Shown: positions 12,731-25,214, numbered from the stretch's first letter. The stretch is 64,000 nucleotides of DNA from Ostrea edulis (GCF_947568905.1 NC_079170.1:84196001-84260000), one strand, 5' to 3'. The notes: a model not told the origin generated them from the sequence alone. Numbers and translations are program-made.

Positions 12731-13479
12731 TAATCTCAACAACACCAAGTACCTAAAAGTGTCAAATTCACAAAGTTCATGCAAGGTCAATCATCAAATA
12801 CAAATAGTATCTAAAGCACTAAACTGACCAACAACATGAGCAGTTAAGATTAATTGTCATATTTTTGGCACAATTATTACCTGTCCCTTCCTCAGTACAA
12901 ATAAAGAAAGTTTTACATTAGCAAAATATGTTTAAAAAATAAATATATAAAAAATGCTAACACTAAATCTATAGCAAGAGGCCCATGGGGCATATCGCTC
13001 ACCTGAGTCACCTTGGCTCATATTTAAACTGTAACTACATCTGTTGTTTGAAATTGGACTAGATCTAGCTATATTTGAAAATTCAAATACTGTACTCAAT
13101 AAGTCTTTTTATTTCCTGTTGGATTTGAAAACTTTCTTGTGTCTCCACCCCCAACACGATGATGGGCTCCATTGGAAGTGTGATATCAAACACAATATAT
13201 ATAAGTTGTTGGGCATCTTTCTTCCAATTTGAAGCACAATATTGATTTCGTGAAAAAAATTACCTCCCTTTATTTTCAAACACATATTATCTACGTAAAA
13301 TTAAAATTAATTACCAATTACATATCGTCTCTAACAAAATAACAAACACAAAAACGAGTCATAAAAGAGACATTTTATTTCTTTTTAAATATTTTTCTTA
13401 TCAACATGATAAAATTCAACCGCGATAGTTCAGCAGCAAATGGCGTGACGGGCGGGTGTAAAAGCCGGAATGGGGCTGG

Positions 13480-14330
13480 AATGGGAGTAGTGACATGAAT
13501 TAAAATCACAATATCTCCGCTAATACTTGACATATTTTCATTGGATAAAGTTTCCGAACATCCGTGAAACAAGGACTATTAGAATATATGAAATATTTGA
13601 AATAAATTAATGCGGTATATTTAAAAACCTTGCCAGAATGGACCGAGCTCGAAAAAAATACTAATCTAAAATGAAGGAATAGACTCGTTTAACTGGCAAT
13701 ATCTCCTACACTACTTTGAGTATCTTCATTCGGTAAAGATTCCACATATCTGCAGATCCATACCGTCTAGAAAATATAAAACTGTTGAAGATATCTTATA
13801 GATAAATATACGAAAATCCTGCCGGAATGAAGAACGGTGTGCAATTTTAACAAGAATTCTGAGTAGTCCTTCTCGTGTAAACTACAATATCTCTTTTATA
13901 TTTGAATATTTTTTCATTCGGGAAAGTTTCCATTCATCTATGATACTACAGCTATCAGAATATATACAGTTTAATTATATTTACCTTTATCTATGGATGA
14001 AAACCCTGCCGGAATGGGAAAATATGGACCATTTTTTAGGTAAAATCATAGGTCGGAATGGAGGTAGTGACATAAACAAAATCGCAGTATCTCCGTTATT
14101 ATTCTATATATTTTCATTCGGTAAGGTTACACTACATCTGTAGAACCAGGGCTATTAGAATATATAAAACTCGTTTAAATAAATTAATAAGGTATTTTCA
14201 TAAATCTTGTCGAAATGGACCGAACTCGACAAAAAGCGTATCTAAAGTACTGCAGGGGATCTCAATAAAATGTAAATATCTCCTATTAGTACTTTAAATG
14301 CTTTCATTTGGTAAAGTTTCCACTCATGTA
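13480..14330 (+). repeat. Left subterminal degenerate tandem repeats of the MULE (~190-bp spacing, ~575-bp higher-order period)
   Basis: TTCATT.GGTAAAG and CCGGAATG motifs recur. 13480-13760 resembles 14055-14330. Confidence 0.7.
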
Positions 14331-14679
14331 TGGACCCAAAGTGTCAGGTAATTATAAACTGTGATATTTTGTGTGAATTCTTTTTTACAAAACTTCGTAC
14401 CGGAATGAACAGAGAATGTGCCAGCGAGAAAGCCTGTGAGCAAAAGTGTTTCTGCCCCCGGGATGAGGAGTGTGTCTGCGAGTGCGATGTGGATAAAAAT
14501 CACCAGCAAAATGAAGAATCGCGTCCTTAAAACAATCCATGCCATCAACCGGGATGGACATGCATCATGTGAGAGAGAAGAAACAAGCCTGCAAATGCTA
14601 ACAACGGAACCCGATGTGTGTGCTTATGTAAAATCGTTTGACAGCCATGGGGGTGTTGTGAAGAGTGCGTGCAGAAGCA

Positions 14680-15550
14680 CCCATAAAAAAGGTTGTGAGA
14701 GTGATGAGAAGAATGTGTGCAGAAGCACTCAGAATAAAGTTTGTGAGAGTGTTGAGAAGAATGTTTGCAGATGCACCCAGAAGAAAGTTTGTGAGAGTGA
14801 TGAGAAGAATATGTGCAGAAATATACAGAATAAAGTTTGTGAGAGTGGTGGGAAGAATGTGTGCAGATGCACCCAGAAGAAAGTTTGTGAGAGTGATGAG
14901 AAGAATATGTGCAGAAGTATCCAGAATGAAGTTTGTGAGAGTGATGAGACGAATGTGTGCAGAAGCACCCAGAGGAAAGTCTGTGAGAGTGTTGCGAAGA
15001 ATGTGTACAGAAGCACCCAGAAGAAAGTTTGTGAGAGTTGTAAGAAGAATATGTGCAGAAGTACCCAGAAGAAAGTTTCTGAGAGTGTTGAGAAGAATGT
15101 GTGCAGAAGCACCCAGAATGAAGTTTGTGAGAGTGATGAGAAGAATGTGTGCAGAAATATCCAGAAGAAAGTTTGTGAGAGTGATGAGAAGAATATGTGC
15201 AGAAATATCCAGAAGAAAGTTTCTGAGTGTTGAGAAGAATGTGTGCAGAAGCACCCAGAATGAAGTTTGTGAGCGTGATGAGAAGAATGTGTGCAGAAAT
15301 ATCCAGAAGAAAGTTTGTGAGAGTGATGAGAAGAATGTGTGCAGAAGCACCCAGAAGAAAGTTTGTGAGAGTGATGAGAAGGATGTGTGCAGAACTATCC
15401 AGAAGAAAGTTTGTGAGAGTGATGAGAAGAATGTGTGCAGAAGCACCCAGAAGAAAGTTTGTGAGAGTGATGAGAAGGATGTGTGCAGAACTATCCAGAA
15501 GGAAGTTTGTGAGAGTGATGAGAAGGATGTGTGCAGAACTATCCAGGAGA
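14680..15550 (+). repeat. 48-bp tandem repeat encoding Cys-rich 16-aa units (QKKVCESDEKNVCRST), about 18 copies
   Basis: Directly visible in ORFs 14418-15233 and 14665-15633, with a 2-nt deletion near 15228 switching frames. Confidence 0.9.
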
Positions 15551-15633
15551 ACGTGAAAGTGTCTAGCGACAAGAGTGATTCCGATTGTGAGAATAATGTG
15601 AAAGTGCTGAAAGGTGGCGGTGTTTTAACGTAG

Positions 15634-17950
15634 TCTGTAAACGAACCGATGGATCAAATCCAGATTACTGCTGCGCTTAAAAATCCGGATCCCGCTAAAA
15701 TTTGCGAAATTCCACCAGTGAAACCGGAGAGAAACCTATATGATAATCAGAAAAAACGCCGACGACTGTAGATGCGACCAGTATCAATGGTTAAACAATG
15801 GCAGTTCTTGTGTGTCGTCCGAGGGAGATATTCTACACCGTAAATATTTCAAGATTAAAATAGGTTGTCCCAAGTCTTCGTGAAACAGAAAAGCCGCAAG
15901 CTCAACGCGTTTCACCCGTAGCGCTTATTTTATGGAGTCCAACAAAGATCTAGTGCTAGTGCGTTATATCGGTGACGAATCCGTCTACATTCCGCTAACT
16001 TATGGTAACAACAAGAATAAAGAAAAGTGTGATTTTGTGCGTACGTGTCCGTCCGTCATGGATCAAATTAAGGAGGTATGTATACTACACCAGAGAAATA
16101 TGATATGGATGAAAAGTGGAGGAGATGTACAACAATATTTTGAAATTGAAAACTTTCAAATTTACTATATTTAGTCAAAACGTGGAGTTTTAGTTGTTAG
16201 CAATCCGGGGAAAAAATTAAAACCCTTGCTGGACTCGTACTCGCGATCTACAGTTCAGCAGTCGACGCGCTAACCTACTGAGCTATTCATCTATGCGATG
16301 ATTAAAGAAATGAATAGACAAAAATTTCTGATATTTATATTTTCATCCATATGTTAAAAGGAAGTCAGCCATTATGACGATGTAGAGTACCCCCTTAATG
16401 AGGATTCCGAAAGTGATGTCTCCCATGCAAATTTTCGATAAATTGAACGCGGCCAATAATGTTCCAAGTGTCGAATACATCGGTGTTATGAATGCGCGTG
16501 ATGTGAACCAAGTAAAGAACATTTCTAAACATGTGCGTGCTACTAAAAAACTGACTAAAGACGAAATTTATAACTTGGTGTTATTAGGTTATCATTTGGA
16601 GAGTTTCATACACGAAATCAGAAAATTTTTCTGATCTTGTTACTATTCTGGGTTTACCAGAAATATTTGAGATTTTCAATCAGTTACTGGATGTTGATGA
16701 TGCTAGTATTTCTATATGTTCAGGGTACGATACCACATTTAATTTGGGTGATTTTTATGTAACGCCTTTAATTTTCAGGCAGATACTTTTCGAGAGCAAA
16801 CCAGCAATCCCTTTAGCATTTCTAATCCACGAACGTAAGTATCAAAAATGTCACGAAAGGTTATTTGATTATATTGCAGAGAAAATTCCAAAAATCAAAC
16901 CCCCAAAAAATTACCATAGCCACCGAGAGGGAAAAGGGGGTTTCAAATGCTATTGCTAAAAGTTTGCCAAATTTTGTAAATCTGTTTTGTTGGAATCATT
17001 TAAAGCGTGATTTTAAGTTTTGGTTGCAAAAAGAAAACGGGCCTCAAGGTAACGAAATTGCTATTTACATTCAGGATTTGAGTAGTATTTTACAAAGCGA
17101 TAAAGAAAATGCCGAAAATATTATTACCGAAGTTGCATCGAAATGGTCACAGGCAGCAGTTCAATATTTCGATATACATGTACATTTGAAATCAGATATA
17201 TTAGCAAAATGAGTCATCCAGCAATTTCCTTGTCTGTACAATCCGTTTTCCGGGATAACAAACAACGCGTCAGAGAGTATAAATAACATTTTAAAACTAC
17301 ATGTTAGCGGCAAGGAACTTCCTGTAGATGCATTAGCTTTAAGTTTACAGTTACTACAATATCGGTATATTTATAATATTCAGTGTGGTTTGGCGGGTAT
17401 CGGGCCTTAGAAATTATTAGACATGTTTTCTGGCATAAAAATTACAAAAGACGAAATCATAATTCCAAACAAATTGATAGAACCAAGTAAAATTATAGAA
17501 TATGTTAAGGGTACTTTAGAAAAAAATACCCTGTTTGCGCTGCCGAAGATACTATTACTAGTACTTTTACAAATTCAGATTGTTCTTCCGAGAATTTAGA
17601 AGTAAATAATGAAAACCTAATTCAGGAACCAGTTCGAGGCGAACCAAAACAGAATATGTCACAAGCGTGTTTAGCTAAATTAACTGTTGAAAATAAGGGT
17701 GTTACATTTGTTGACGACCAGAAATCATTTATGATAAACGGTAGTACCAATAAAAAATACGCAGTTACTTTATTTCCTAAAGAAACTTGTCAATGCCCAG
17801 TTGCCGGTACTTGTTATCATATTTTAGCAGCGCGGTTAAAAATGGGGGATATTTCCGATACTAAAAGAGTTGTTAATTTGAAACAATTATCCGAAAATAA
17901 TTTGAAACGTAACGAAAAAAAAAAGCTGGTAAGAAAAAACTGCGACCTAA
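15634..17950 (+). pseudogene. MULE transposase (DDE) with SWIM zinc finger; multiple stops and frameshifts
   Basis: YDTTFNLGDFYVTPLIFR..PAIPLAFLIHERK (first D, ~16726); TEREKGVSNAI..LFCWNHLKRD (second acidic site and CxxH); ITNNASESINNILK (E, ~17270); CQCPVAGTCYHILAA (SWIM, ~17785). Confidence 0.9.
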
Positions 17951-18094
17951 CGATTATGATAAGGAAGTAATACCCGTGTCCAATTCTGCCATTGTTTTAG
18001 ACGAGAAAGACGATTTATGTCCATCGAAAAAAAGTAAAAAAAAATCGCCACCGATAGAAAGTGATAGACGGATCTAAGTCATAAAGCTAATATT

Positions 18095-18629
18095 TTGGAT
18101 TCCCGTGGTTGGTTATGTTCAAATATAATAAATAAGTCTTTAGAAATAATTTCGAAACAATTTAAAAATATAAACGGTTATCAACTAACAAATCTTGCTC
18201 CCGTATTTGATAAAGATTTAAACTCGTGGAAATGCAAAAAGGGATTCCAGCCTTCAAATTTGCCATCTGCACAAATTCACCACACAGGTCGTGATCACTG
18301 GGTTATTTCATTTCAAAATAAAGAAAACGAAATTTGTATTTTGGATAGTTTAAGCAGCACTAAAAACCATACCACTAACACACCGTCTCTCGAAATTCAA
18401 TTGTCTTTTATGGAAACAATAAACCGTCTGTGCAGTTAATTTATTTTAGAAAACCAGCAACAAAAAAATGGTTATGATTGTGGTTTATTCGCTATCGCCA
18501 ACTTAGTAGAGTTTTGTTTTAACGATGCGACATTTGAATTTAAAACCGAGTTTGTTGTAAATAAAATGCGAGAACATTTAATCAGTTGTTTAGAACATGG
18601 TCAATTTACTAAATTTCCACAAGAAACCA
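18095..18629 (+). pseudogene. Ulp1/SENP-type (clan CE) cysteine protease domain carried by the MULE
   Basis: GWLCSNII..QIHHTGRDHWV..ILDSL and, after a frameshift, QQQKNGYDCGLFAIA: His, Asp and Gln-x5-Cys catalytic pattern. Confidence 0.85.
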
Positions 18630-19039
18630 TAAATAATGAGATTGGTAAAGTTGGCTACTAGTAACCAGCTACTAGTAACTGGCTACTTAAAAAGAGAAAA
18701 GTTGGTTACTAGTAGCCAGCTACTTGAACCAGGAAAAGTTAGCTACTAGTAGCCAGTTACTAGTAGCTAGCTACTAAAAGTAAGAAAAGTTAGCTACTCG
18801 TAGCCAGCTACTACAAAATATAAAAGTTATAATTACTGATAACCAGCTACCAGATAAAGGTTAATGAGTTTGAAAATTATTATCTATCAGATTTATTTCT
18901 AAAGAGGACGAGGAGTCGTATGATATTTCAAGCTCAATTATCCCCAATTACATAACGTTGCAATACAAAATACGAATAAACTTTTTCAACTGAGTGTTTA
19001 CTTTAAAAATGATACGGATTGAATTCAGACCTTCATTCA

Positions 19040-21455
19040 TTTGATATACCATCCATTTGGAGATATCTGCTACTTTTACAATTTGATTCGAGTTACCCTG
19101 AAATTTCAACATTTGTATGAATACCGTAAGAAACTTTATGTTTGTATTAGATATCTGACGAATTTACAACTATACATATGGCAAGAAGTGATAGATTGTG
19201 TTTTGATACGCCACGTATTTTCAGATATCGCTCTTTAGGAAATCAGTTACTTACACATTTTGATTATCGGTACAATGAAATTTCAAGATCTGTGTGAATA
19301 CTCCGTGTTTATATCATATATTTAACTAACTTACAACGATACGTATGGCGAGTAGTGATATTGGGTATCGTGATATGTCATGAATTTTCAGATGTCACGC
19401 TTAAGGAAGTCAACTACTTATACCTTTTGATGGCAGGTAACCTGAAATTTCAAGTTTTTCGCAAATATCTTAAGGCACGTTATGTTTGTATTAGATATCT
19501 CATTAATTTACCAATATTCATGTAAAGAGGAGTGGTATTAGATATCTTCATCAGCCATCAAGTTTCAGATATCACCATTAAGGAAGTCAGCTACTTATAC
19601 CTTTTGATTCCTGGTAACCTGAAATTTCAAGATTTTCGTAGATATCTTAAGGAAATTTGTGTTTATATTAGATATCTGACTAATTTACAACTATCAAAGT
19701 GAAGAGGAGTGATACTAGGTATCTTGATATGCAATCAATTTTCAGATATCACGTTTAAGGAAGTCAGCTACTTATACCTTTTGATTCCGGGTAACCTGAA
19801 ATTTCAAGTTTTTCATAAATATCTTAAAGAACTCCTTGTTTGTATTAGATATCTGACTAATTTACAACTATCCATATGAAGTGGAGTGGTATTAGGTATC
19901 TTGATATGCCATTAATTATCAGATATCACCCTTAAGGAAGTCAGCTACTTATACTTTTTGATTGAAGGTAACATAAATTTCAAGTTTTTTATCAATATTT
20001 TAAGGAAGTCTGTGTTTGTATTAGATATCTGACTAATTTACAATTATCCACGTGAAGAGGAGTGATATTAGGTATCTTGACATGCCATCAATTTTCAGAT
20101 ATCACGCTTAAGGAAGTCAGCTACTTATACCTTTTCATTGCAGGTAACCAGAAAATTCAAGTTTTTAGAAAATATTTTAGAAGCTCCGTGTTTGTTTTAG
20201 ATATCTGATTAATTTACCAATGCACATATGACAAGATCTGATATTAAGTATCTTGATATAACATCAATTTTGAGATATCACGCTTAAGGAAGTCAGCTAC
20301 TGATACCTTTTCATTCCAGGTAACCTGAAATTTCATTATTTTCATAAATATCTTAAGGAACTCCTAGTTTGTATTAGATATCTGACTAACTTACAACTAT
20401 CCACGTCAAGAGGAATGATATTAGGTATCTTGATATGCCAACAATTTTCAGATATCACGCTTAAGGAAGTCAGCTACTTATACCTTTTGATTCCCGGTAA
20501 CCTGAAAATTGAAGTTTTCCATATATATCCTTAGGAACTCTGTGTTTGTATTAGATATCTGACTAATTTACAATTATCCATGTGAAGAGGAATGACATTA
20601 GGTATCTTGATATGCCATCAATTTTCAGATATCACGCTTAAGGAAGTCAGCTACTTATTCCTTTTCATTGCAGGTAACCTGAAATTTCATGTTTTTCATA
20701 AATATCTTAAGGAACTCCTAGTTTGTATTAGATATCTGACTAACTTACTACTATCCACGTCAAGAGGAATGATATTAGGTATCTTGATATGCCAACAATT
20801 TTCAGATATCACGCTTAAGGAAGTCAGCTACTTATACCTTTTAATTTCAGGAAACCTAAAATTTAAAGTTTTTAGCAAATATTCTATGGAACTCTGTGTT
20901 TGTATTAGATATCGTATTAATTTACCAGTGCACATATGACAAGGAGTTATATTAGGTATCTTGATATGCCATCAATATTCAGATGTCACGCTTAAGGAAG
21001 TCAGCTACTTACACCTTTTGATTCTAGGTAACCTAAAATTTCAGGTTTTTCGAAAATATCCTAAGAAACTCTGTGTTTGTGTTAGATATTTCATTGATTT
21101 ACCATCTCACATATTACAAGGAATGATATTAGGTATCTTGATATCACCCTTAATGAAGTCAGTTACTTATACCTTTTGATTCCTGGTGACTTGAAATTTC
21201 AACTTTTTCGTAAATATCTTAAGTAACTCTGCTTTTGTATTAGATATCTGACTAACTTACAACTATTCACATGAAGAGGAGTGATATTAGGTATTTTGAT
21301 ATACAATTTATTTTCAGATATCACCCTCAAGGAAGTCAGCTACTTATACCTTTTGATTCAAGTTGTCCGTAAATATCTTGAGGAATTATGCGTTTGTATT
21401 AGATATCTGACTAACTTACAACCATCCACGTGAAGAGGAGTGATATTAGGTATCT
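19040..21455 (+). repeat. ~177-bp satellite array, left arm (about 14 monomers)
   Basis: The C of the recurring TCAGATATCAC motif falls at 19566, 19743, 19920 and 20096 (spacing 176-177 bp). Confidence 0.95.
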
Positions 21456-24000
21456 TGATACCTATTATCACACCTCTTCACGTAGATAGTAGTTAACTAG
21501 TCAGATATCTAACAAAAACACAGAGTTCCTTAAGCTATATACAAAACAATTTAAATTACAGGATGTCTGGAATGAAAAGGTATAAGTAGCTGACTTCGTC
21601 GAACGTGATATCTGAAAATTGATCGCATATCAAGACAGTTCATATAAACCCCTGTAATATCAGCAAAAAAAATTAGTCAGATATCTAACATATCTATCTG
21701 AAAATTGATGGCATATCAAGATACTTGATATCACTCCTCTTCACGTGGATAGTAAATAATTAGTCTGATATGTAATACAAACACAGTTCCTTAAAAGATA
21801 TCTACAAAACATTTGAAATTTCAGATAACCAGGAATCAAAAGGTATAAGTAGCTAACTTCCTTTAGCGTGATATCTGAAAATTGATGGCATATTAAGATA
21901 CTTAATATCACTCCTTGTAATATGTGAGATGGTTAATTAATGATGTATCTAATACAAAAGCAGAGTTCCTTAAGATATGTACGGAAAACTTGAAATTTCA
22001 GGTTGCCTAGAATTAAAAGCTATAAGTAGCTGACTTCCTTACTCCTGATATCTGAAAATTGATTGATGGCATATTAAAATACTTAATATCACTCCTTGTC
22101 ATATGTGTGATTGTAAATTAATGAGATATCTAACACAAACACAGAGTTCCTTAACATATTTGCGAAAACCTGACATTTTAGGCTATCTGGAATCAAAAGG
22201 TATATGTAGCTGACTTCCTTATGGGTGATATCTGAAAATTGATGGCATATCAAGATACCTAGTATCACTCCTCTTGACTTTGGTAGTTGTAAATTAGTCA
22301 GATATCTAATACAAACGCAGAGTTCCTTAAGATATGTACGGAAGACTTGAAATTTCAGGTTACCTAGAATCAAATGGTATAAGTAGCTGACTTCCTTAAG
22401 AGTGATATCTGAAAATTGATGGCTTATAAAGATATCTAATACCACTACTCTTCATGTGAATATTGGTAAAATAATGAGAAATCCAATACAAACATGAAGT
22501 GCCTTAAGATATTTGCAAAAACTTTGAAATTTCATGTTACCTGCAATCAAAAGGTATACGTAGTTGACTTCCTTAAGGGTGATATCTGAAAATTGATGGC
22601 ATATCAAGATATCTAATATTCCTTCTCTTCGCGTGGATAGTTGTATGTTAGTCAGATACAACTGTATCTAATACAATCACAGAGTTCTTTAAGATATTTA
22701 TTAGAAAACTTGAAATTTCAGGTTACCAGGAATCAAAAAGTATAAGTAACTGACTTCTTTAAGCCTGATATCTCAAAATTGATGTTATAACAAGATACCT
22801 AATATCAGATCTTGTCATATGTGCATTGGTAAATTAATCAGATATCTAAAACAAACAGGAGCTCCTCCTTAAAATATTTTCTAAAAACTTGAAATTTCTG
22901 ATTACCTGCAATGTAAAGGTATAAGTAGCTGACTTCCTTATGGGTGATATCTGAAAATTGATGGCATATTAAGATACCTAATATCACTCCTCTTCACGTG
23001 GATAATTGTAAATTAGTCAGATATCTAATACAAACAAGTTCTTTAAGATATTTATGAAAAACTTGAAATTTCAGGTTACCCGGAATCAAAAGGTATAGTA
23101 GCTGACTTCCTTAAACGTGATATCTGAAAATTGATGGCATATTAAGATACTTAATATCACTCCTTGTCATATGTGAGATGGTAAATTTATGAGATATATA
23201 ATACAAAGACAGAGTTCCTTAAGATGTTTGCGAAAAACCTGAAATTTTAGACTACCTGGAATCAAAAGGTATATGTAGCTGACTTCCTTATGGGTGATAT
23301 CTGAAAATTGATGGCATATCAAGCTAACTAGTATCACTCCTCTTCATTTTGATAGTTGTAAATTAGTCAGATATCTAATATAAACACAAATTTCCTTAAG
23401 ATATCTACGAAAATCTTGAAATTTCAGGTTACCAGGAATCAAAAGGTATAAGTAGCTGACTTCCTTAATGGTGATATCTGAAAATTGATGGCTGATGAAG
23501 ATATCTAATACCACTCCTCTTTACATGAATATTGGTAAATTAATGAGATATCTAATACAAACATAACGTGCCTTAAGATATTTGCGAAAAACTTGAAATT
23601 TCAGGTTACCTGCCATCAAAAGGTATAAGTAGTTGACTTCCTTAAGCGTAACATCTGAAAATCCATGACATATCACGATACCCAATATCACTACTCGCCA
23701 TACGTATCGCTGTAAGTTAGTTAGATATATGATATAAACACGGAGTATTCACACAGATCTTGAAATTTCATTGTACCGATAATCAAAATGTATAAGTAAC
23801 TGATTTCCTAAAGAGCGATATCTGAAAATACGTGGCGTATCAAAACACAATCTATCACTTCTTGTCATATGTATAGTTGTAAATTCGTCAGATATCTAAT
23901 ACAAACATAAAGTTTCTTACGGTATTCATACAAATGTTGAAATTTCAGGGTAACTCGAATCAAATTGTAAAAGTAGCAGATATCTCCAAATAGATGGTAT
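21456..24000 (-). repeat. ~177-bp satellite array, right arm, opposite orientation (about 14 monomers)
   Basis: Monomers are reverse complements of the left-arm monomers (GTGATATCTGAAAATTGATGGCATATCAAGATACC...). Confidence 0.95.
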
Positions 24001-24405
24001 ATCAAATGAATGAAGGTCTGAATTCAATCCGTATCATTTTTAACGTAAACACTCAGTTGAAAAAGTTTTGGTATTTTGCATTGCAACGTTATGTAATTGG
24101 GAATAATTGAGCATGAAATTTCATACGACTCCTCGTCCTCTTTAGAAATAAATCTGATAGATAATAATTTTCAAACTCATTAACCTTTATCTGGTAACTG
24201 GTTATCAGTAATTATAACTTTTATATTTTGTAGTAGCTGGCTACGAGTAGCTAACTTTTCTTACTTTTAGTAGCTGGTTACTAGTAACTGGCTACTAGTA
24301 GCTAACTTTTCCTGGTTCAAGTAGCTGACTACTAGTAGCCAACTTTTCTCTTTTTAAGTAGCCAGTTACTAGTAGCTGGTTACTAGTAGCCAACTTTACC
24401 GATCT

Positions 24406-24600
24406 TAAATAATACTTCAACTTTAAAATACAAAACAATGAAAATTGGTTGTAATTGTTCCTGTAACTTTCCAGACTGGATTGATGAAATGATAGGTTGT
24501 GAAAAGCAGTGCAATATATGGAAACATTGTAAATGTGCAATTGTGCCTGATTATTGTAAAGAAGTGGATTTGTTCGGAGCATGATCGTGAATAAAAGATG
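24406..24600 (+). pseudogene. PHD-like finger: C-terminal continuation of the Ulp1 ORF beyond the foldback insertion
   Basis: CNCSCNFPDWIDEMIGCEKQCNIWKHCKC, then KKWICSEH after a 1-nt frameshift. In frame with ..FPQETINN once the insertion is removed. Confidence 0.8.
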
Positions 24601-24943
24601 TTTCTGTTGGTTTTGTGTTGATTTGATATGGTAATTATCTTCAAGTGTCAGTGTGCAATATATGGAAACATTGTAAATGTGCAATTGTGCCTGATTATTG
24701 TAAAGAAGTGGATTTGTTCGGAGCATGATCGTGAATAAAAGATGTTTCTGTTGGTTTTGTGTTGATTTGATATGGTAATTATCTTCAAGTGTCAGTGTGC
24801 AATATATGGAAACATTGTAAATGTGCAATTGTGCCTGATTATTGTAAAGAAGTGGATTTGTTCGGAGCATGATCGTGAATAAAAGATGTTTCTGTTGGTT
24901 TTGTGTTGATTTGATTATTTGGTAATTATCTTCAAGTGTCAGT
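24509..24943 (+). repeat. Near-perfect 144-bp tandem triplication covering the PHD end, stop codon and AATAAA
   Basis: Unit starts at 24509, 24653 and 24797. Confidence 0.95.
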
Positions 24944-25214
24944 CCCTGTGCACCTTGTTTTTCACACCTTTTGAGTTTTGGGGAACGTTAAGCCTAACCG
25001 TGTTATCCTGGCCTAGCGGAGTATTGGCGGAGATATTGCGATTTTAATTAATTTACTCCCATTCCGGCTTTTACACCTTACCTGGCGTGACGTCACACAA
25101 AAACTTATGGAGAGTTAATATTTTCGAAAGTGTGTTTATTTTTAATTTTAGTGTAAATGACGGCAATTAAAAGGGTGACCGATCCAGAAACCAGGTGGGG
25201 CACATCGACTGATG

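What the first reader, a model, noticed from the sequence alone, without database searches (positions are those of the whole stretch)
18639..24405. 5.8-kb satellite-built foldback element with a 2-nt hairpin centre, behaving as a single insertion
Seen: two ~2.8-2.9-kb arms in opposite orientation meet at AGGTATC-TT-GATACCT (21448-21463) with no internal gene. Each arm has ~400 bp of unique and short-repeat terminus plus about 14 monomers of a ~177-bp satellite. The outer ~1.1 kb are near-identical mirror images, including divergent monomers. A diagnostic variant monomer at ~20160-20290 reappears mirrored at ~22770-22900, while some inner monomers are shuffled. The block is flanked by TAAATAAT direct repeats, and removing it restores one open frame (..CLEHGQFTKFPQETINN|TSTLKYKTMKIGCNCSC..). 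Inference: a mobile giant palindrome that carries a satellite, similar to FB-type Mutator relatives, and so a possible vehicle for satellite dispersal. The loop-less centre suggests origin by fold-back DNA synthesis.
Basis: partly seen in the sequence, partly recalled or inferred. Interest (0 to 1): 0.82.

Follow-up and report, generated by a model that had tools for sequence, protein, structure and literature searches.

The report
Satellite-armed foldback transposon in an oyster
This 5.8-kb block is one inserted copy of a roughly 270-copy oyster "foldback" jumping gene whose two inverted arms are arrays of a 177-bp satellite; the design is already known from flies, nematodes and sea urchins, so it is a solid but unsurprising new family that shows how this satellite is spread around the genome.

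Summary
Window 18639-24405 is a 5,767-bp foldback element. Each arm has a ~500-bp structured terminus and 14-15 monomers of a 177-bp satellite, and the arms meet head-to-head at AGGTATC-TT-GATACCT.

It is one insertion. The target duplication is 9 bp, not 8 (TAAATAATG/TAAATAATA, 8 of 9). At least six paralogues of the host Mutator-like element have the two flanks contiguous, with a single target copy.

The genome (an oyster, 895 Mb) holds 532 such termini and no control matches. Perfect 9-bp duplications flank 6 of 9 copies checked. Two sister copies on other sites are 99% identical to this one over their whole length, including its arm asymmetries, so the palindrome moves as a unit.

One 23.1-kb copy with the same termini and a perfect 9-bp duplication carries the genome's only intact 1,246-aa ORF. 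Its predicted fold is closest to the Drosophila NOF-FB protein and to MULE transposases.

All long copies share the same centre, a junction at a micro-palindrome inside the monomer. Arm identity is lowest there, which argues against recent fold-back synthesis.

Verdict: a new member of the known Foldback / MULE-NOF kind. The scan has already reported this family elsewhere in this genome (s1-274680).

The parts
18630..18638 (+). Left copy of the 9-bp target-site duplication (TAAATAATG)
   Evidence: Matches 24406-24414 at 8 of 9. Empty paralogous sites hold a single copy.
18639..24405 (.). Complete non-autonomous foldback element, 5,767 bp, termini AGATTGG...CCGATCT
   Evidence: 99.0% and 99.2% identical over its whole length to copies at C7:73.1 Mb and C1:33.7 Mb.
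18639..19139 (+). Left flanking (terminal) domain. Subterminal short repeats of 14/37/51/88 bp lie at 18647-18829, with five TACTAGTA octamers. These are presumed transposase-binding sites.
   Evidence: The first 422 bp is 97-100% identical in at least 40 copies.
19140..21460 (+). Left arm: 14 units of the 177-bp satellite (354-bp dimer periodicity). Units are irregular or truncated near the centre.
21448..21463 (.). Centre AGGTATC-TT-GATACCT, with the orientation switch at monomer position ~76. Intact monomers read TATC-TT-GATA at this point.
21451..23906 (-). Right arm: 15 units of the same satellite in inverted orientation
23907..24405 (-). Right flanking (terminal) domain with subterminal short repeats at 24215-24397
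24406..24414 (+). Right copy of the target-site duplication (TAAATAATA)
13441..25091 (+). Host: a decayed Mutator-like element (TIR core GGTGTAAAAGCCGGAATGGG at both ends). Its Ulp1-protease / zinc-finger tail is split by the foldback insertion.
   Evidence: Its TIRs are unrelated to the foldback termini.

Best explanation
The block is one copy of a non-autonomous Foldback-type DNA transposon of an oyster.

Each end has a ~500-bp terminal domain dense in short subterminal repeats, presumed to be transposase-binding sites. An array of 177-bp satellite monomers follows on each side. The two inverted arrays abut with no middle domain.

The element moves as a whole by cut-and-paste and makes 9-bp staggered target cuts. 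It landed in the Ulp1/zinc-finger tail of an unrelated, already decayed Mutator-like element.

The enzyme is most likely supplied in trans by a NOF-FB-like (MULE-superfamily) DDE transposase. The only intact gene for it sits inside a 23.1-kb family member on the same chromosome (C7:10354188-10377294).

Array length changes in whole monomers by unequal exchange or slippage. The spacer-less centre arose once, as a junction between a left-arm and a right-arm monomer at the monomer's own TATC-TT-GATA micro-palindrome. That event removed the coding middle, and every long non-autonomous copy inherited it.

Shown here: structure, copy number, target duplications, empty sites, unit mobility, the shared centre, and the transposase fold.

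Inferred: which transposase mobilises it, that the subterminal repeats bind it, and how the centre formed.
For: Structure.

Family size: 532 termini against 0 control matches. At least 40 termini are 97-100% identical over 422 bp, from 722 first-look candidates. Terminus read depth is about 300 against 3-8 on the flank in an independent Illumina run.

Target duplications: perfect 9 bp in L032, L033, L035, L036, L004 and the 23.1-kb copy. The window copy has 8 of 9 and L031 has 7 of 9.

Empty sites: in six paralogous host copies the hits for the left and right flanks overlap by exactly 8 nt, which is one TAAATAAT. Contigs of four runs read flank-TAAATAAT-ACTTCAAC....

Filled junction: a contig of an independent sample spans 18604-18668 without a mismatch.

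Unit mobility: the window copy is 99.0% and 99.2% identical to L032 and L031 (reverse complement), differing by 177-bp and 352-bp indels. Its own arms are only 95.4% alike over the outer 1,300 bp. Orthologous arms across copies are 98.9-99.4% alike, against 97.1-98.2% within a copy, over the outer 1,000 bp.

Satellite location: of the 10 best-scoring satellite loci that could be checked against the listed perfect termini, 7 lie between a pair of them and 1 lies 2.3 kb inside a single one. Most scored loci show + then - monomers within a few kb.

Transposase: a 1,246-aa ORF with a single intact copy in the genome, inside a copy with arms 99.9% identical and the duplication TGTTTTCTC. There are no separate TIRs around the 13.4-kb interior. 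The interior next to both arms is essentially single-copy. It has 1,858 relatives, with invariant D..D..CxxH..N-x3-E. The AF2 model has pLDDT 85. The nearest Atlas fold is '120.7 kDa protein in NOF-FB transposable element' (TM 0.69 over 516 residues), followed by Pfam-MULE clusters. PDB neighbours are Hermes, P element, ISCth4 (which I recall, unchecked, belongs to the IS256 family, the bacterial kin of MULEs), RAG1 and Transib transposases. The embedding search gives MULE at 0.96 and NOF-FB at 0.94.

Centre: at monomer position ~76 in all seven long copies. The right half is colinear with the 23.1-kb copy's right arm from ATACCT outward, while that copy reads on as a normal monomer.
Against: No Pfam MULE (PF10551) hit for the ORF at E up to 10, nor at E up to 0.01 for any of 93 relatives scanned. 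Superfamily placement therefore rests on fold and embedding, not on a curated sequence model.

The ORF-bearing copy belongs to a different subfamily: its arms are 93-94% identical to the window copy's. The genome also holds other NOF-like ORFs, for example on C9 at 28% identity. Mobilisation by this particular gene is unproven.

A degenerate second copy of the interior on C4 lacks these arms.

The window copy's duplication has one mismatch. One copy (L034) has none.

The empty-site reads sit at about 6x single-copy depth. They are paralogues, not a demonstrated empty allele of this locus.
Confidence: 0.88

Rival explanations
1. Assembly fold-back artefact: a chimeric long read or a mis-join produced a false palindrome.
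For: Palindromes with a 2-nt centre are a known artefact shape. No long read spanning the centre could be examined (one search used contigs and short reads of the left junction only).
Against: The same architecture and the same centre occur in at least seven other copies on other chromosomes, with their own 9-bp duplications. The arms differ by 2-5%. Paralogous empty sites fit exactly. A filled-junction contig exists in an independent sample.
Confidence: 0.01
2. Local rearrangement rather than transposition: either two independent satellite-bearing insertions head to head, or an in-situ inverted duplication.
For: Inner monomers are not mirror images.
Against: A single duplication brackets the whole block, and the empty sites lack all of it. 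Two other loci carry the same 5.8-6.3-kb structure at 99% identity, including the non-mirrored inner part.
Confidence: 0.02
3. A Helitron/Helentron-type carrier, the vehicle so far described for dispersed oyster satellites (PMC7492417, PMC8268682, PMC11136912).
For: Oyster satellites are mostly Helitron-linked in the literature, and the arrays here are short and interspersed in the same way.
Against: Helitrons make no target duplication and have asymmetric ends (my own knowledge of the family). This element has symmetric ~500-bp inverted termini and 9-bp duplications. The associated ORF is a DDE transposase fold, not Rep/helicase.
Confidence: 0.02
4. It is a foldback transposon, but it is mobilised by a different transposase than the C7 ORF. 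Candidates are another NOF-like gene such as the 1,936-aa ORF on C9, or an enzyme now lost. The family would then be currently immobile.
For: The C7 copy is of another subfamily, 93-94% arm identity. Several NOF-like paralogues exist. Foldback architecture has evolved with different transposases, for example Galileo with a P-type enzyme (PMC3169594, PMC3573991).
Against: The first 30 nt of the termini are identical between subfamilies, apart from one T/C difference that was itself propagated. The C7 ORF is intact, lies between arms of this very family with a perfect duplication, and has no TIRs of its own. 9-bp duplications fit MULE-type enzymes (PMC3169594).
Confidence: 0.25
5. One reading: the spacer-less palindrome was made by fold-back (snap-back) DNA synthesis that copied one arm into the other.
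For: The centre has a 2-nt loop and lies on a pre-existing micro-palindrome of the monomer, a favoured site for snap-back priming. In one subfamily the two arms of a copy are 99.7-99.9% identical while copies differ by 1-3%.
Against: In this copy and its sisters, identity is lowest and monomer order is not mirrored next to the centre, the opposite of what arm copying predicts. The inverted arms already exist around a 13.4-kb interior in the ORF-bearing copy. One shared centre means at most one such event, in an ancestor.
Confidence: 0.15

Closest known systems
Drosophila melanogaster Foldback (FB) and FB-NOF
   Same: Both have long inverted arms built of tandem repeats with little or no middle, 9-bp target duplications (my own knowledge), and many non-coding copies alongside rare copies carrying a large ORF. 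The oyster ORF's predicted fold is closest to the '120.7 kDa protein in NOF-FB transposable element' cluster.
   Different: The arm repeats here are a 177-bp satellite, not 10/20/31-bp repeats. The oyster ORF shows no detectable sequence similarity to any named NOF entry in the tools used. Its C-terminus looks USP-like (by eye), whereas the NOF-like clusters carry Ulp1/PHD. This is a mollusc, not an insect.
Tetris (Drosophila virilis), PMC4079207
   Same: Same domain order: a terminal flanking domain, then ~200-bp tandem repeats inside the TIRs. Both have 8-10-bp duplications and a MITE-like short relative, and both link a foldback element to a satellite.
   Different: Tetris has only three structurally complete copies, a middle domain, no autonomous partner found, and kb-size free arrays of its repeat. 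Here there are ~270 elements' worth of termini, no middle domain, a candidate autonomous copy, and no large free arrays among the loci that could be checked.
Tm1 of root-knot nematodes, PMC3169594
   Same: Composite TIRs of variable length made of short tandem motifs, 9-bp duplications, MITE-like forms, and a single transposase-bearing copy of the Mutator superfamily.
   Different: Tm1 arms are 14-bp repeats, not a satellite. Its transposase is of the Phantom type (FLYWCH + Pfam MULE). The elements are 1-2.6 kb.
Galileo (Drosophila buzzatii group), PMC3573991 / PMC3688188
   Same: Long, internally repetitive TIRs, structural dynamism, and homogenised arms.
   Different: Galileo has a P-superfamily transposase and 7-bp duplications (my own knowledge).
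Helentron/Helitron non-autonomous carriers of oyster satellites (Cg_HINE, pearl/CvA), PMC7492417
   Same: Same host group and the same outcome: short satellite arrays scattered over all chromosomes by a mobile element.
   Different: A different transposition class: rolling-circle, no duplication, one direct array. Here there are two inverted arrays, duplications and a DDE enzyme.

Membership tests
Foldback elements (structural class) | Very long terminal inverted repeats that make up most of the element, with a short or absent middle domain | tested here: met
   The arms span 18639-21455 and 21458-24405 with a 2-nt centre.
Foldback elements (structural class) | Arms internally built of tandem repeats, with copy number variable between arms and copies | tested here: met
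   14 against 15 monomers in this copy. Copies range from 0.85 to 23 kb, and sister copies differ by 177-bp and 352-bp indels.
Foldback elements (structural class) | Flanked by target-site duplications (9 bp in FB and Tm1, 8-10 bp in Tetris) | tested here: met
   Perfect 9 bp in 6 of 9 copies examined; 8 of 9 in the window copy, 7 of 9 in L031, none in L034. Tm1 and Tetris values are from PMC3169594 and PMC4079207.
MULE-NOF lineage (FB-NOF type transposase) | An autonomous member encodes a protein homologous to the NOF 120.7-kDa protein | tested here: met
   Met by predicted structure (TM 0.69 over 516 residues to the NOF-FB cluster) and by embedding (0.94). No residue-level alignment to a named NOF sequence was possible.
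MULE-NOF lineage (FB-NOF type transposase) | The window's own element encodes the transposase | tested here: not met
   ORFs of at least 100 aa inside 18639-24405 lie within satellite repeats, and no coding region sits between the arms. This copy is non-autonomous.
Mutator (MULE) superfamily | RNase-H-fold DDE catalytic core with a CxxH motif after the second D | tested here: met
   In the 36-sequence alignment A3, D235, D308, C353, H356, N521 and E525 are invariant. Fold matches include Hermes, P element, ISCth4, RAG1 and Transib and Pfam-MULE clusters. The CxxH motif is shared with hAT, P and Kolobok, so it is not specific on its own (my own knowledge).
Mutator (MULE) superfamily | Match to the curated Pfam MULE domain PF10551 | tested here: not met
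   No hit for the ORF at E up to 10, and none at E up to 0.01 in 93 relatives; one relative gave a weak ZSWIM1-3_RNaseH-like hit. The Atlas NOF-FB cluster itself lists no PF10551 among its common families, so the model may simply not reach this clade.
Mutator (MULE) superfamily | 9-11-bp target-site duplication | tested here: met
   9 bp.
Mutator (MULE) superfamily | Demonstrated excision and integration by the encoded enzyme | not testable with these tools
   Needs a transposition assay.
Helitron/Helentron satellite carriers | No target duplication, asymmetric ends with a 3' hairpin, Rep/helicase in autonomous members | tested here: not met
   Symmetric inverted termini, 9-bp duplications and a DDE-fold ORF.

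The most novel reading that the evidence does not exclude
In this oyster a single NOF-like Foldback family is essentially the only home of a 177-bp satellite: about 270 elements and no free arrays. Its arms are kept identical within an element by a process tied to the palindrome itself, either hairpin-templated repair or arm copying at transposition. This would explain why one subfamily shows 99.7-99.9% arm identity against 97-99% between copies, while the window's subfamily has escaped that process and propagates asymmetric arms faithfully. If so, the family would be a natural system for watching a satellite being born, homogenised and dispersed entirely inside a transposon, with the driving transposase gene in hand.
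Probability: 0.3. Interest if true: 0.6.

Novelty: new member of a known kind. Interest (0 to 1): 0.42.

Why it matters
Dispersed satellite arrays in oysters have so far been attributed mainly to Helitron/Helentron carriers (PMC7492417, PMC8268682, PMC11136912). This family is a second, mechanistically different vehicle. It is a cut-and-paste foldback element that plants two inverted arrays at each of a few hundred sites on all chromosomes.

Unlike Tetris, the classic foldback-to-satellite case, a candidate autonomous copy with an intact NOF-like transposase is present. That makes the satellite-transposon relationship experimentally approachable.

Hundreds of 5-8-kb near-perfect palindromes also matter in practice. 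They are potential sites of fork stalling, ectopic recombination and inversions, sources of hairpin RNA, and a hazard for long-read assembly and for satellitome surveys, which would score the arms as ordinary satellite.

Tried and rejected
- **Pfam on the ORF and relatives.** Scans of the 1,246-aa ORF, its C-terminal 277 aa and 93 relatives gave no transposase family. Only accessory PHD, Ulp1, UCH and YqaJ domains appeared in some relatives.
- **Word-index protein searches.** The single-sequence and profile searches found only 2-3 unnamed close relatives.
- **Cluster look-up of the ten best relatives.** It gave no functional names. Sources included Mytilus, Holothuria and probably mis-binned metagenome bins.
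- **hhalign of the ORF family profile against the host element's MULE-like fragment.** No relationship was found (probability 0.6%). This is uninformative because the fragment is short and decayed.
- **Host element as the autonomous partner.** Rejected: its TIRs are unrelated to the foldback termini, and its region was not hit by the ORF search.
- **The degenerate interior copy on C4.** It has no arms of this family within 10 kb, but it has its own inverted repeats and a 17-bp array.
- **Rfam.** There were only sub-threshold miRNA-precursor matches on the central hairpin and on a terminal repeat, taken as generic hairpin hits. No tRNA was found.
- **Reads.** The centre was therefore not examined in reads. 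The empty-site reads turned out to be paralogues, not an empty allele.
- **More satellite loci.** Coordinates were used instead.
- **Literature.** The supplement tables of the oyster satellitome paper are not held. It could not be checked whether this monomer equals a published OedSat/CgiSat entry. A 177-bp, 68.9% AT CgiSat15 without a TE match is listed in PMC8268682.


Full report
**1. What is in the window**

The outermost 338 nt of the two sides are 97% complementary, and the next 981 nt are 95% complementary. Tandem Repeats Finder reports 177-bp arrays, also scored as a 354-bp dimer, on both sides in opposite orientation. It also finds nested 14/37/51/88-bp repeats in the outer 200 nt of each end.

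BLAST with one monomer gives 14 units on the left arm and 15 inverted units on the right arm. The orientation switches at AGGTATC-TT-GATACCT, 21448-21463. The variant monomer at 20160-20290 has its best inverted match at 22756-22889, 93%. The first three monomers of each arm are 98-99% mirror images. Towards the centre the one-to-one correspondence is lost.

There is no tRNA and no credible Rfam family in the block. Its only long ORFs lie within the satellite repeats.

**2. It is a single insertion**

Thirty copies of the terminus all begin AGATYGGTAAAGTTGG, and the base before it is not conserved. The element therefore starts at 18639.

With that boundary the flanks read TAAATAATG | element | TAAATAATA.

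The insertion lies in the Ulp1-protease / zinc-finger tail of a decayed Mutator-like element. That host spans about 13441-25091, and its TIR core GGTGTAAAAGCCGGAATGGG is unrelated to the foldback termini.

I searched the genome separately with the 400 nt to the left and the 400 nt to the right. In six paralogous host copies the two hits abut and overlap by exactly 8 nt, which is one TAAATAAT:

- C6:48971944/51
- C2:106002026/33
- C7:34873866/73
- C1:76211182/89
- C7:35304483/90
- C6:80679463/70

These are empty sites. The left hit stops one base short of the element, so the ancestral ninth base was probably A, and the G at 18638 is a later change.

Translating the two flanks separately gives ...PQETINN and TSTLKYKTMKIGCNCSC..., in phase once the element and one target copy are removed. 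The host frame already carries a stop at 18437-18439. "One open frame" is therefore only locally true.

**3. It is a large, mobile family**

The genome is 895 Mb in 52 contigs, and the window is C7:84196001-84260000. Run labels include "oyster metagenome". From memory, the assembly size fits Ostrea edulis; I did not verify that.

The 30-nt terminus, allowing up to 3 mismatches, occurs 273 times forward and 259 times reverse. The reversed control gives 0 and 0. Among the first 100 perfect matches listed, 29 form +/- pairs 0.85-11 kb apart, mostly 6-7 kb.

Perfect 9-bp duplications flank:

- L032: GGCATAGGG
- L033: CAATCTTTA
- L035: CAAATTATG
- L036: GATAAAATC
- L004: ATAATATTT
- the 23.1-kb copy: TGTTTTCTC

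L031 has 7 of 9 and L034 has none. Copies of ~850 bp consist of the two terminal domains only, a MITE-like form.

In an independent Illumina run, depth rises from 3-8 on the flank to about 300 on the terminus. A contig from another sample covers 18604-18668 without a mismatch, so the filled junction exists outside the assembly.

The contigs that read flank-TAAATAAT-ACTTCAAC... sit at about six times single-copy depth and carry the 18571 G variant. I take them to be the paralogous empty sites, not an empty allele of this locus.

**4. The palindrome moves as a unit**

The window copy is 99.0% identical to L032 (C7:73.1 Mb) and 99.2% identical to the reverse complement of L031 (C1:33.7 Mb) over the full length. 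The differences are indels of 177 bp and 352 bp, one and two monomers.

Its own arms are only 95.4% alike over the outer 1,300 nt. Over the outer 1,000 nt, arms at corresponding positions in different copies are 98.9-99.4% alike, against 97.1-98.2% between the two arms of one copy.

The left-end variant AGATTGG is shared by all three copies. So the arm asymmetry predates at least two transposition events, and the whole foldback was copied faithfully to new sites. This excludes an assembly artefact, an in-situ inverted duplication, and two independent insertions.

A second subfamily behaves differently. It comprises L033, L035, L036 and the 23.1-kb copy, and is 93-94% identical to the window's subfamily. 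Within each of its copies the arms are 99.7-99.9% identical, while copies differ by 1-3%. That points to arm homogenisation within elements.

**5. The satellite lives in these elements**

A dimer of the monomer has 567 first-look places on all large contigs. The 40 scored places mostly show + hits followed within a few kb by - hits.

Ten of these loci lie on the stretch of C1-C3 for which perfect termini were listed. Seven lie between a pair of termini and one lies 2.3 kb inside a single terminus. The count of first-look satellite places (567) is close to the number of termini (532).

"Confined to the element" is therefore likely but not shown.

**6. A candidate autonomous copy**

The termini at C7:10354188 (+) and C7:10377294 (-) bracket 23,107 bp with the perfect duplication TGTTTTCTC. 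The arms are about 5.3 kb and 4.4 kb of the same satellite and are 99.9% identical in the outer kb.

The interior is 13.4 kb with no inverted repeats of its own. The interior next to both arms is essentially single-copy, apart from one small interspersed repeat.

It contains an uninterrupted 1,246-aa ORF. This is the only intact copy in the genome. One degenerate relative lies on C4, and paralogues at 23-31% identity lie elsewhere.

Sequence evidence for its family:

- Pfam finds nothing.
- An exhaustive phmmer search finds 1,858 relatives, 148 of them at E up to 1e-30.
- The named relatives come from a mussel and a sea cucumber.
- Some relatives carry PHD, Ulp1, UCH or YqaJ domains, but none hits Pfam MULE.
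- In a 36-sequence alignment D235, D308, C353, H356, N521 and E525 are invariant.
- The motif around E525 (TN..VE..F..LK) resembles the MULE/IS256 E-block as I recall it. That is a lead, not a test.

Fold evidence: the AlphaFold model of residues 300-919 has mean pLDDT 85. In the PDB it matches Hermes, P-element, ISCth4, RAG1 and Transib transposases. I recall, but did not check, that ISCth4 belongs to the IS256 family, the bacterial kin of MULEs.

In the ESM Atlas the best structural neighbour is the cluster named "120.7 kDa protein in NOF-FB transposable element", with TM 0.69 over 516 residues. Next come clusters carrying PF10551 MULE, with FLYWCH, SWIM, FAR1 or DBD_Tnp_Mut. The feature-based Atlas search agrees, giving MULE at 0.96 and NOF-FB at 0.94.

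I therefore read the ORF as a NOF-type, MULE-superfamily DDE transposase, and the 23.1-kb copy as the likely autonomous member. Nothing here shows that it actually mobilises the window's subfamily.

**7. The centre**

Intact monomers read TTAGGTATCTTGATATGCC, so they contain the 10-nt micro-palindrome TATC-TT-GATA. In all seven long copies the orientation switches at this monomer position.

From ATACCT outward, the window's right half is colinear with the right arm of the 23.1-kb copy (85% over 587 nt). Inward of that point, the 23.1-kb copy continues as an ordinary monomer for 63 nt and then enters the unique interior.

The spacer-less form is therefore best explained as follows. One ancestral event joined a left-arm monomer to a right-arm monomer at the micro-palindrome and removed the interior. 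Possible routes are microhomology-mediated deletion, or a template switch during gap repair after excision. The junction was then inherited by transposition.

That predicts the highest identity and perfect mirror order next to the centre, and the opposite is seen. I give it about 15%, mostly for an old event since blurred by array turnover.

**8. Comparison with what is known**

The architecture is that of Foldback elements: a terminal flanking domain, tandem repeats inside long TIRs, an optional middle, MITE-like short forms, and rare coding copies.

- It matches Drosophila FB/FB-NOF in the 9-bp duplication and the NOF-like protein.
- It matches Tetris in carrying ~200-bp repeats linked to a satellite (PMC4079207).
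- It matches Tm1 in the 9-bp duplications and a single Mutator-type coding copy (PMC3169594).
- It differs from Galileo, which uses a P-type enzyme (PMC3573991).
- It differs from the Helitron/Helentron carriers that dominate the oyster satellite literature (PMC7492417, PMC8268682, PMC11136912).

Three full-text searches found no paper describing a foldback family in oysters. Repbase and Dfam could not be consulted, and the published oyster satellitomes may already list the monomer as a satellite.

The same scan has already reported this family on another chromosome (s1-274680). It has also reported a separate 23.5-kb NOF-like foldback element (s1-301729). I did not re-examine those loci.

**9. 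Verdict**

- The core interpretation is supported, but the origin-by-fold-back-synthesis idea is not favoured.
- This is a well-documented new member of a known kind.
- Its value lies in three things: a second vehicle for oyster satellites, a candidate transposase in hand, and the contrast between a subfamily with homogenised arms and one that propagates asymmetric arms.

Noticed in passing
L033, L035, L036 and C7:10354188-10377294 (outer 1 kb of each arm): In this subfamily the two arms of one element are 99.7-99.9% identical, while different elements differ by 1-3%. In the window's subfamily the arms differ by 2-5% and the asymmetry is inherited. This suggests arm homogenisation (gene conversion or hairpin-templated repair) that one lineage has lost.
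   Followed up: partly
L039:2006-2836:- (C-terminal ~277 aa of the 1,246-aa ORF): By eye the tail has a Cys box (SNTCTIDN) and a His box (YDLYAATLNRHGHF) like USP/UCH deubiquitinases. Pfam finds nothing in it, but two relatives of the family hit PF00443 UCH and others carry Ulp1 instead. Protease modules appear to be swapped on NOF-like transposases.
   Followed up: partly
G000:C4:11596800-11607800 (L052-L054): A degenerate second copy of the 13.4-kb interior (66-71% protein identity, many stops) lacks the 177-bp arms. It has its own inverted repeats and a 67-unit array of a 17-bp repeat, GAAGTTAGCGGTTACTA, which resembles the subterminal AAAGTTAGCTACTAGTA motif. It may be an older sister family with short-repeat arms.
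   Followed up: partly
L034 (G000:C2:280253-287110): A 6.9-kb copy with both termini but no target duplication (TTATTATTT against TACAACTGA). This could mean recombination between two elements or a rearrangement at the site.
   Followed up: no
L004 and L005 (G000:C2:63756649 and C2:63441424): Two ~850-bp satellite-free copies share identical flanks and the same duplication, 315 kb apart. This is a segmental duplication containing the element, not two insertions.
   Followed up: no
window 24509-24943: The 3' part of the host Mutator-like element holds three 98%-identical copies of a 144-bp unit that includes the end of its zinc-finger ORF, a recent local tandem triplication.
   Followed up: no
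window 14418-15633: The 5' part of the host element is a long array of a short coding-like repeat, readable in several frames (KKVCESDEKNVCRSTQ... / RRKFVRVMRRMCAE...), with strong GC and AT skew at 14-16 kb.
   Followed up: no
window 21408-21505: The central hairpin gives a sub-threshold Rfam match to a plant miRNA precursor family (MIR5565, 51.7 bits against an 80-bit gathering score). This is a generic hairpin hit, not a miRNA gene.
   Followed up: yes
P0010, P0018: Two relatives of the NOF-like transposase are filed in NCBI under a Sedimenticola metagenome-assembled genome. These are probably eukaryotic (host animal) contigs mis-binned into a bacterial MAG.
   Followed up: no
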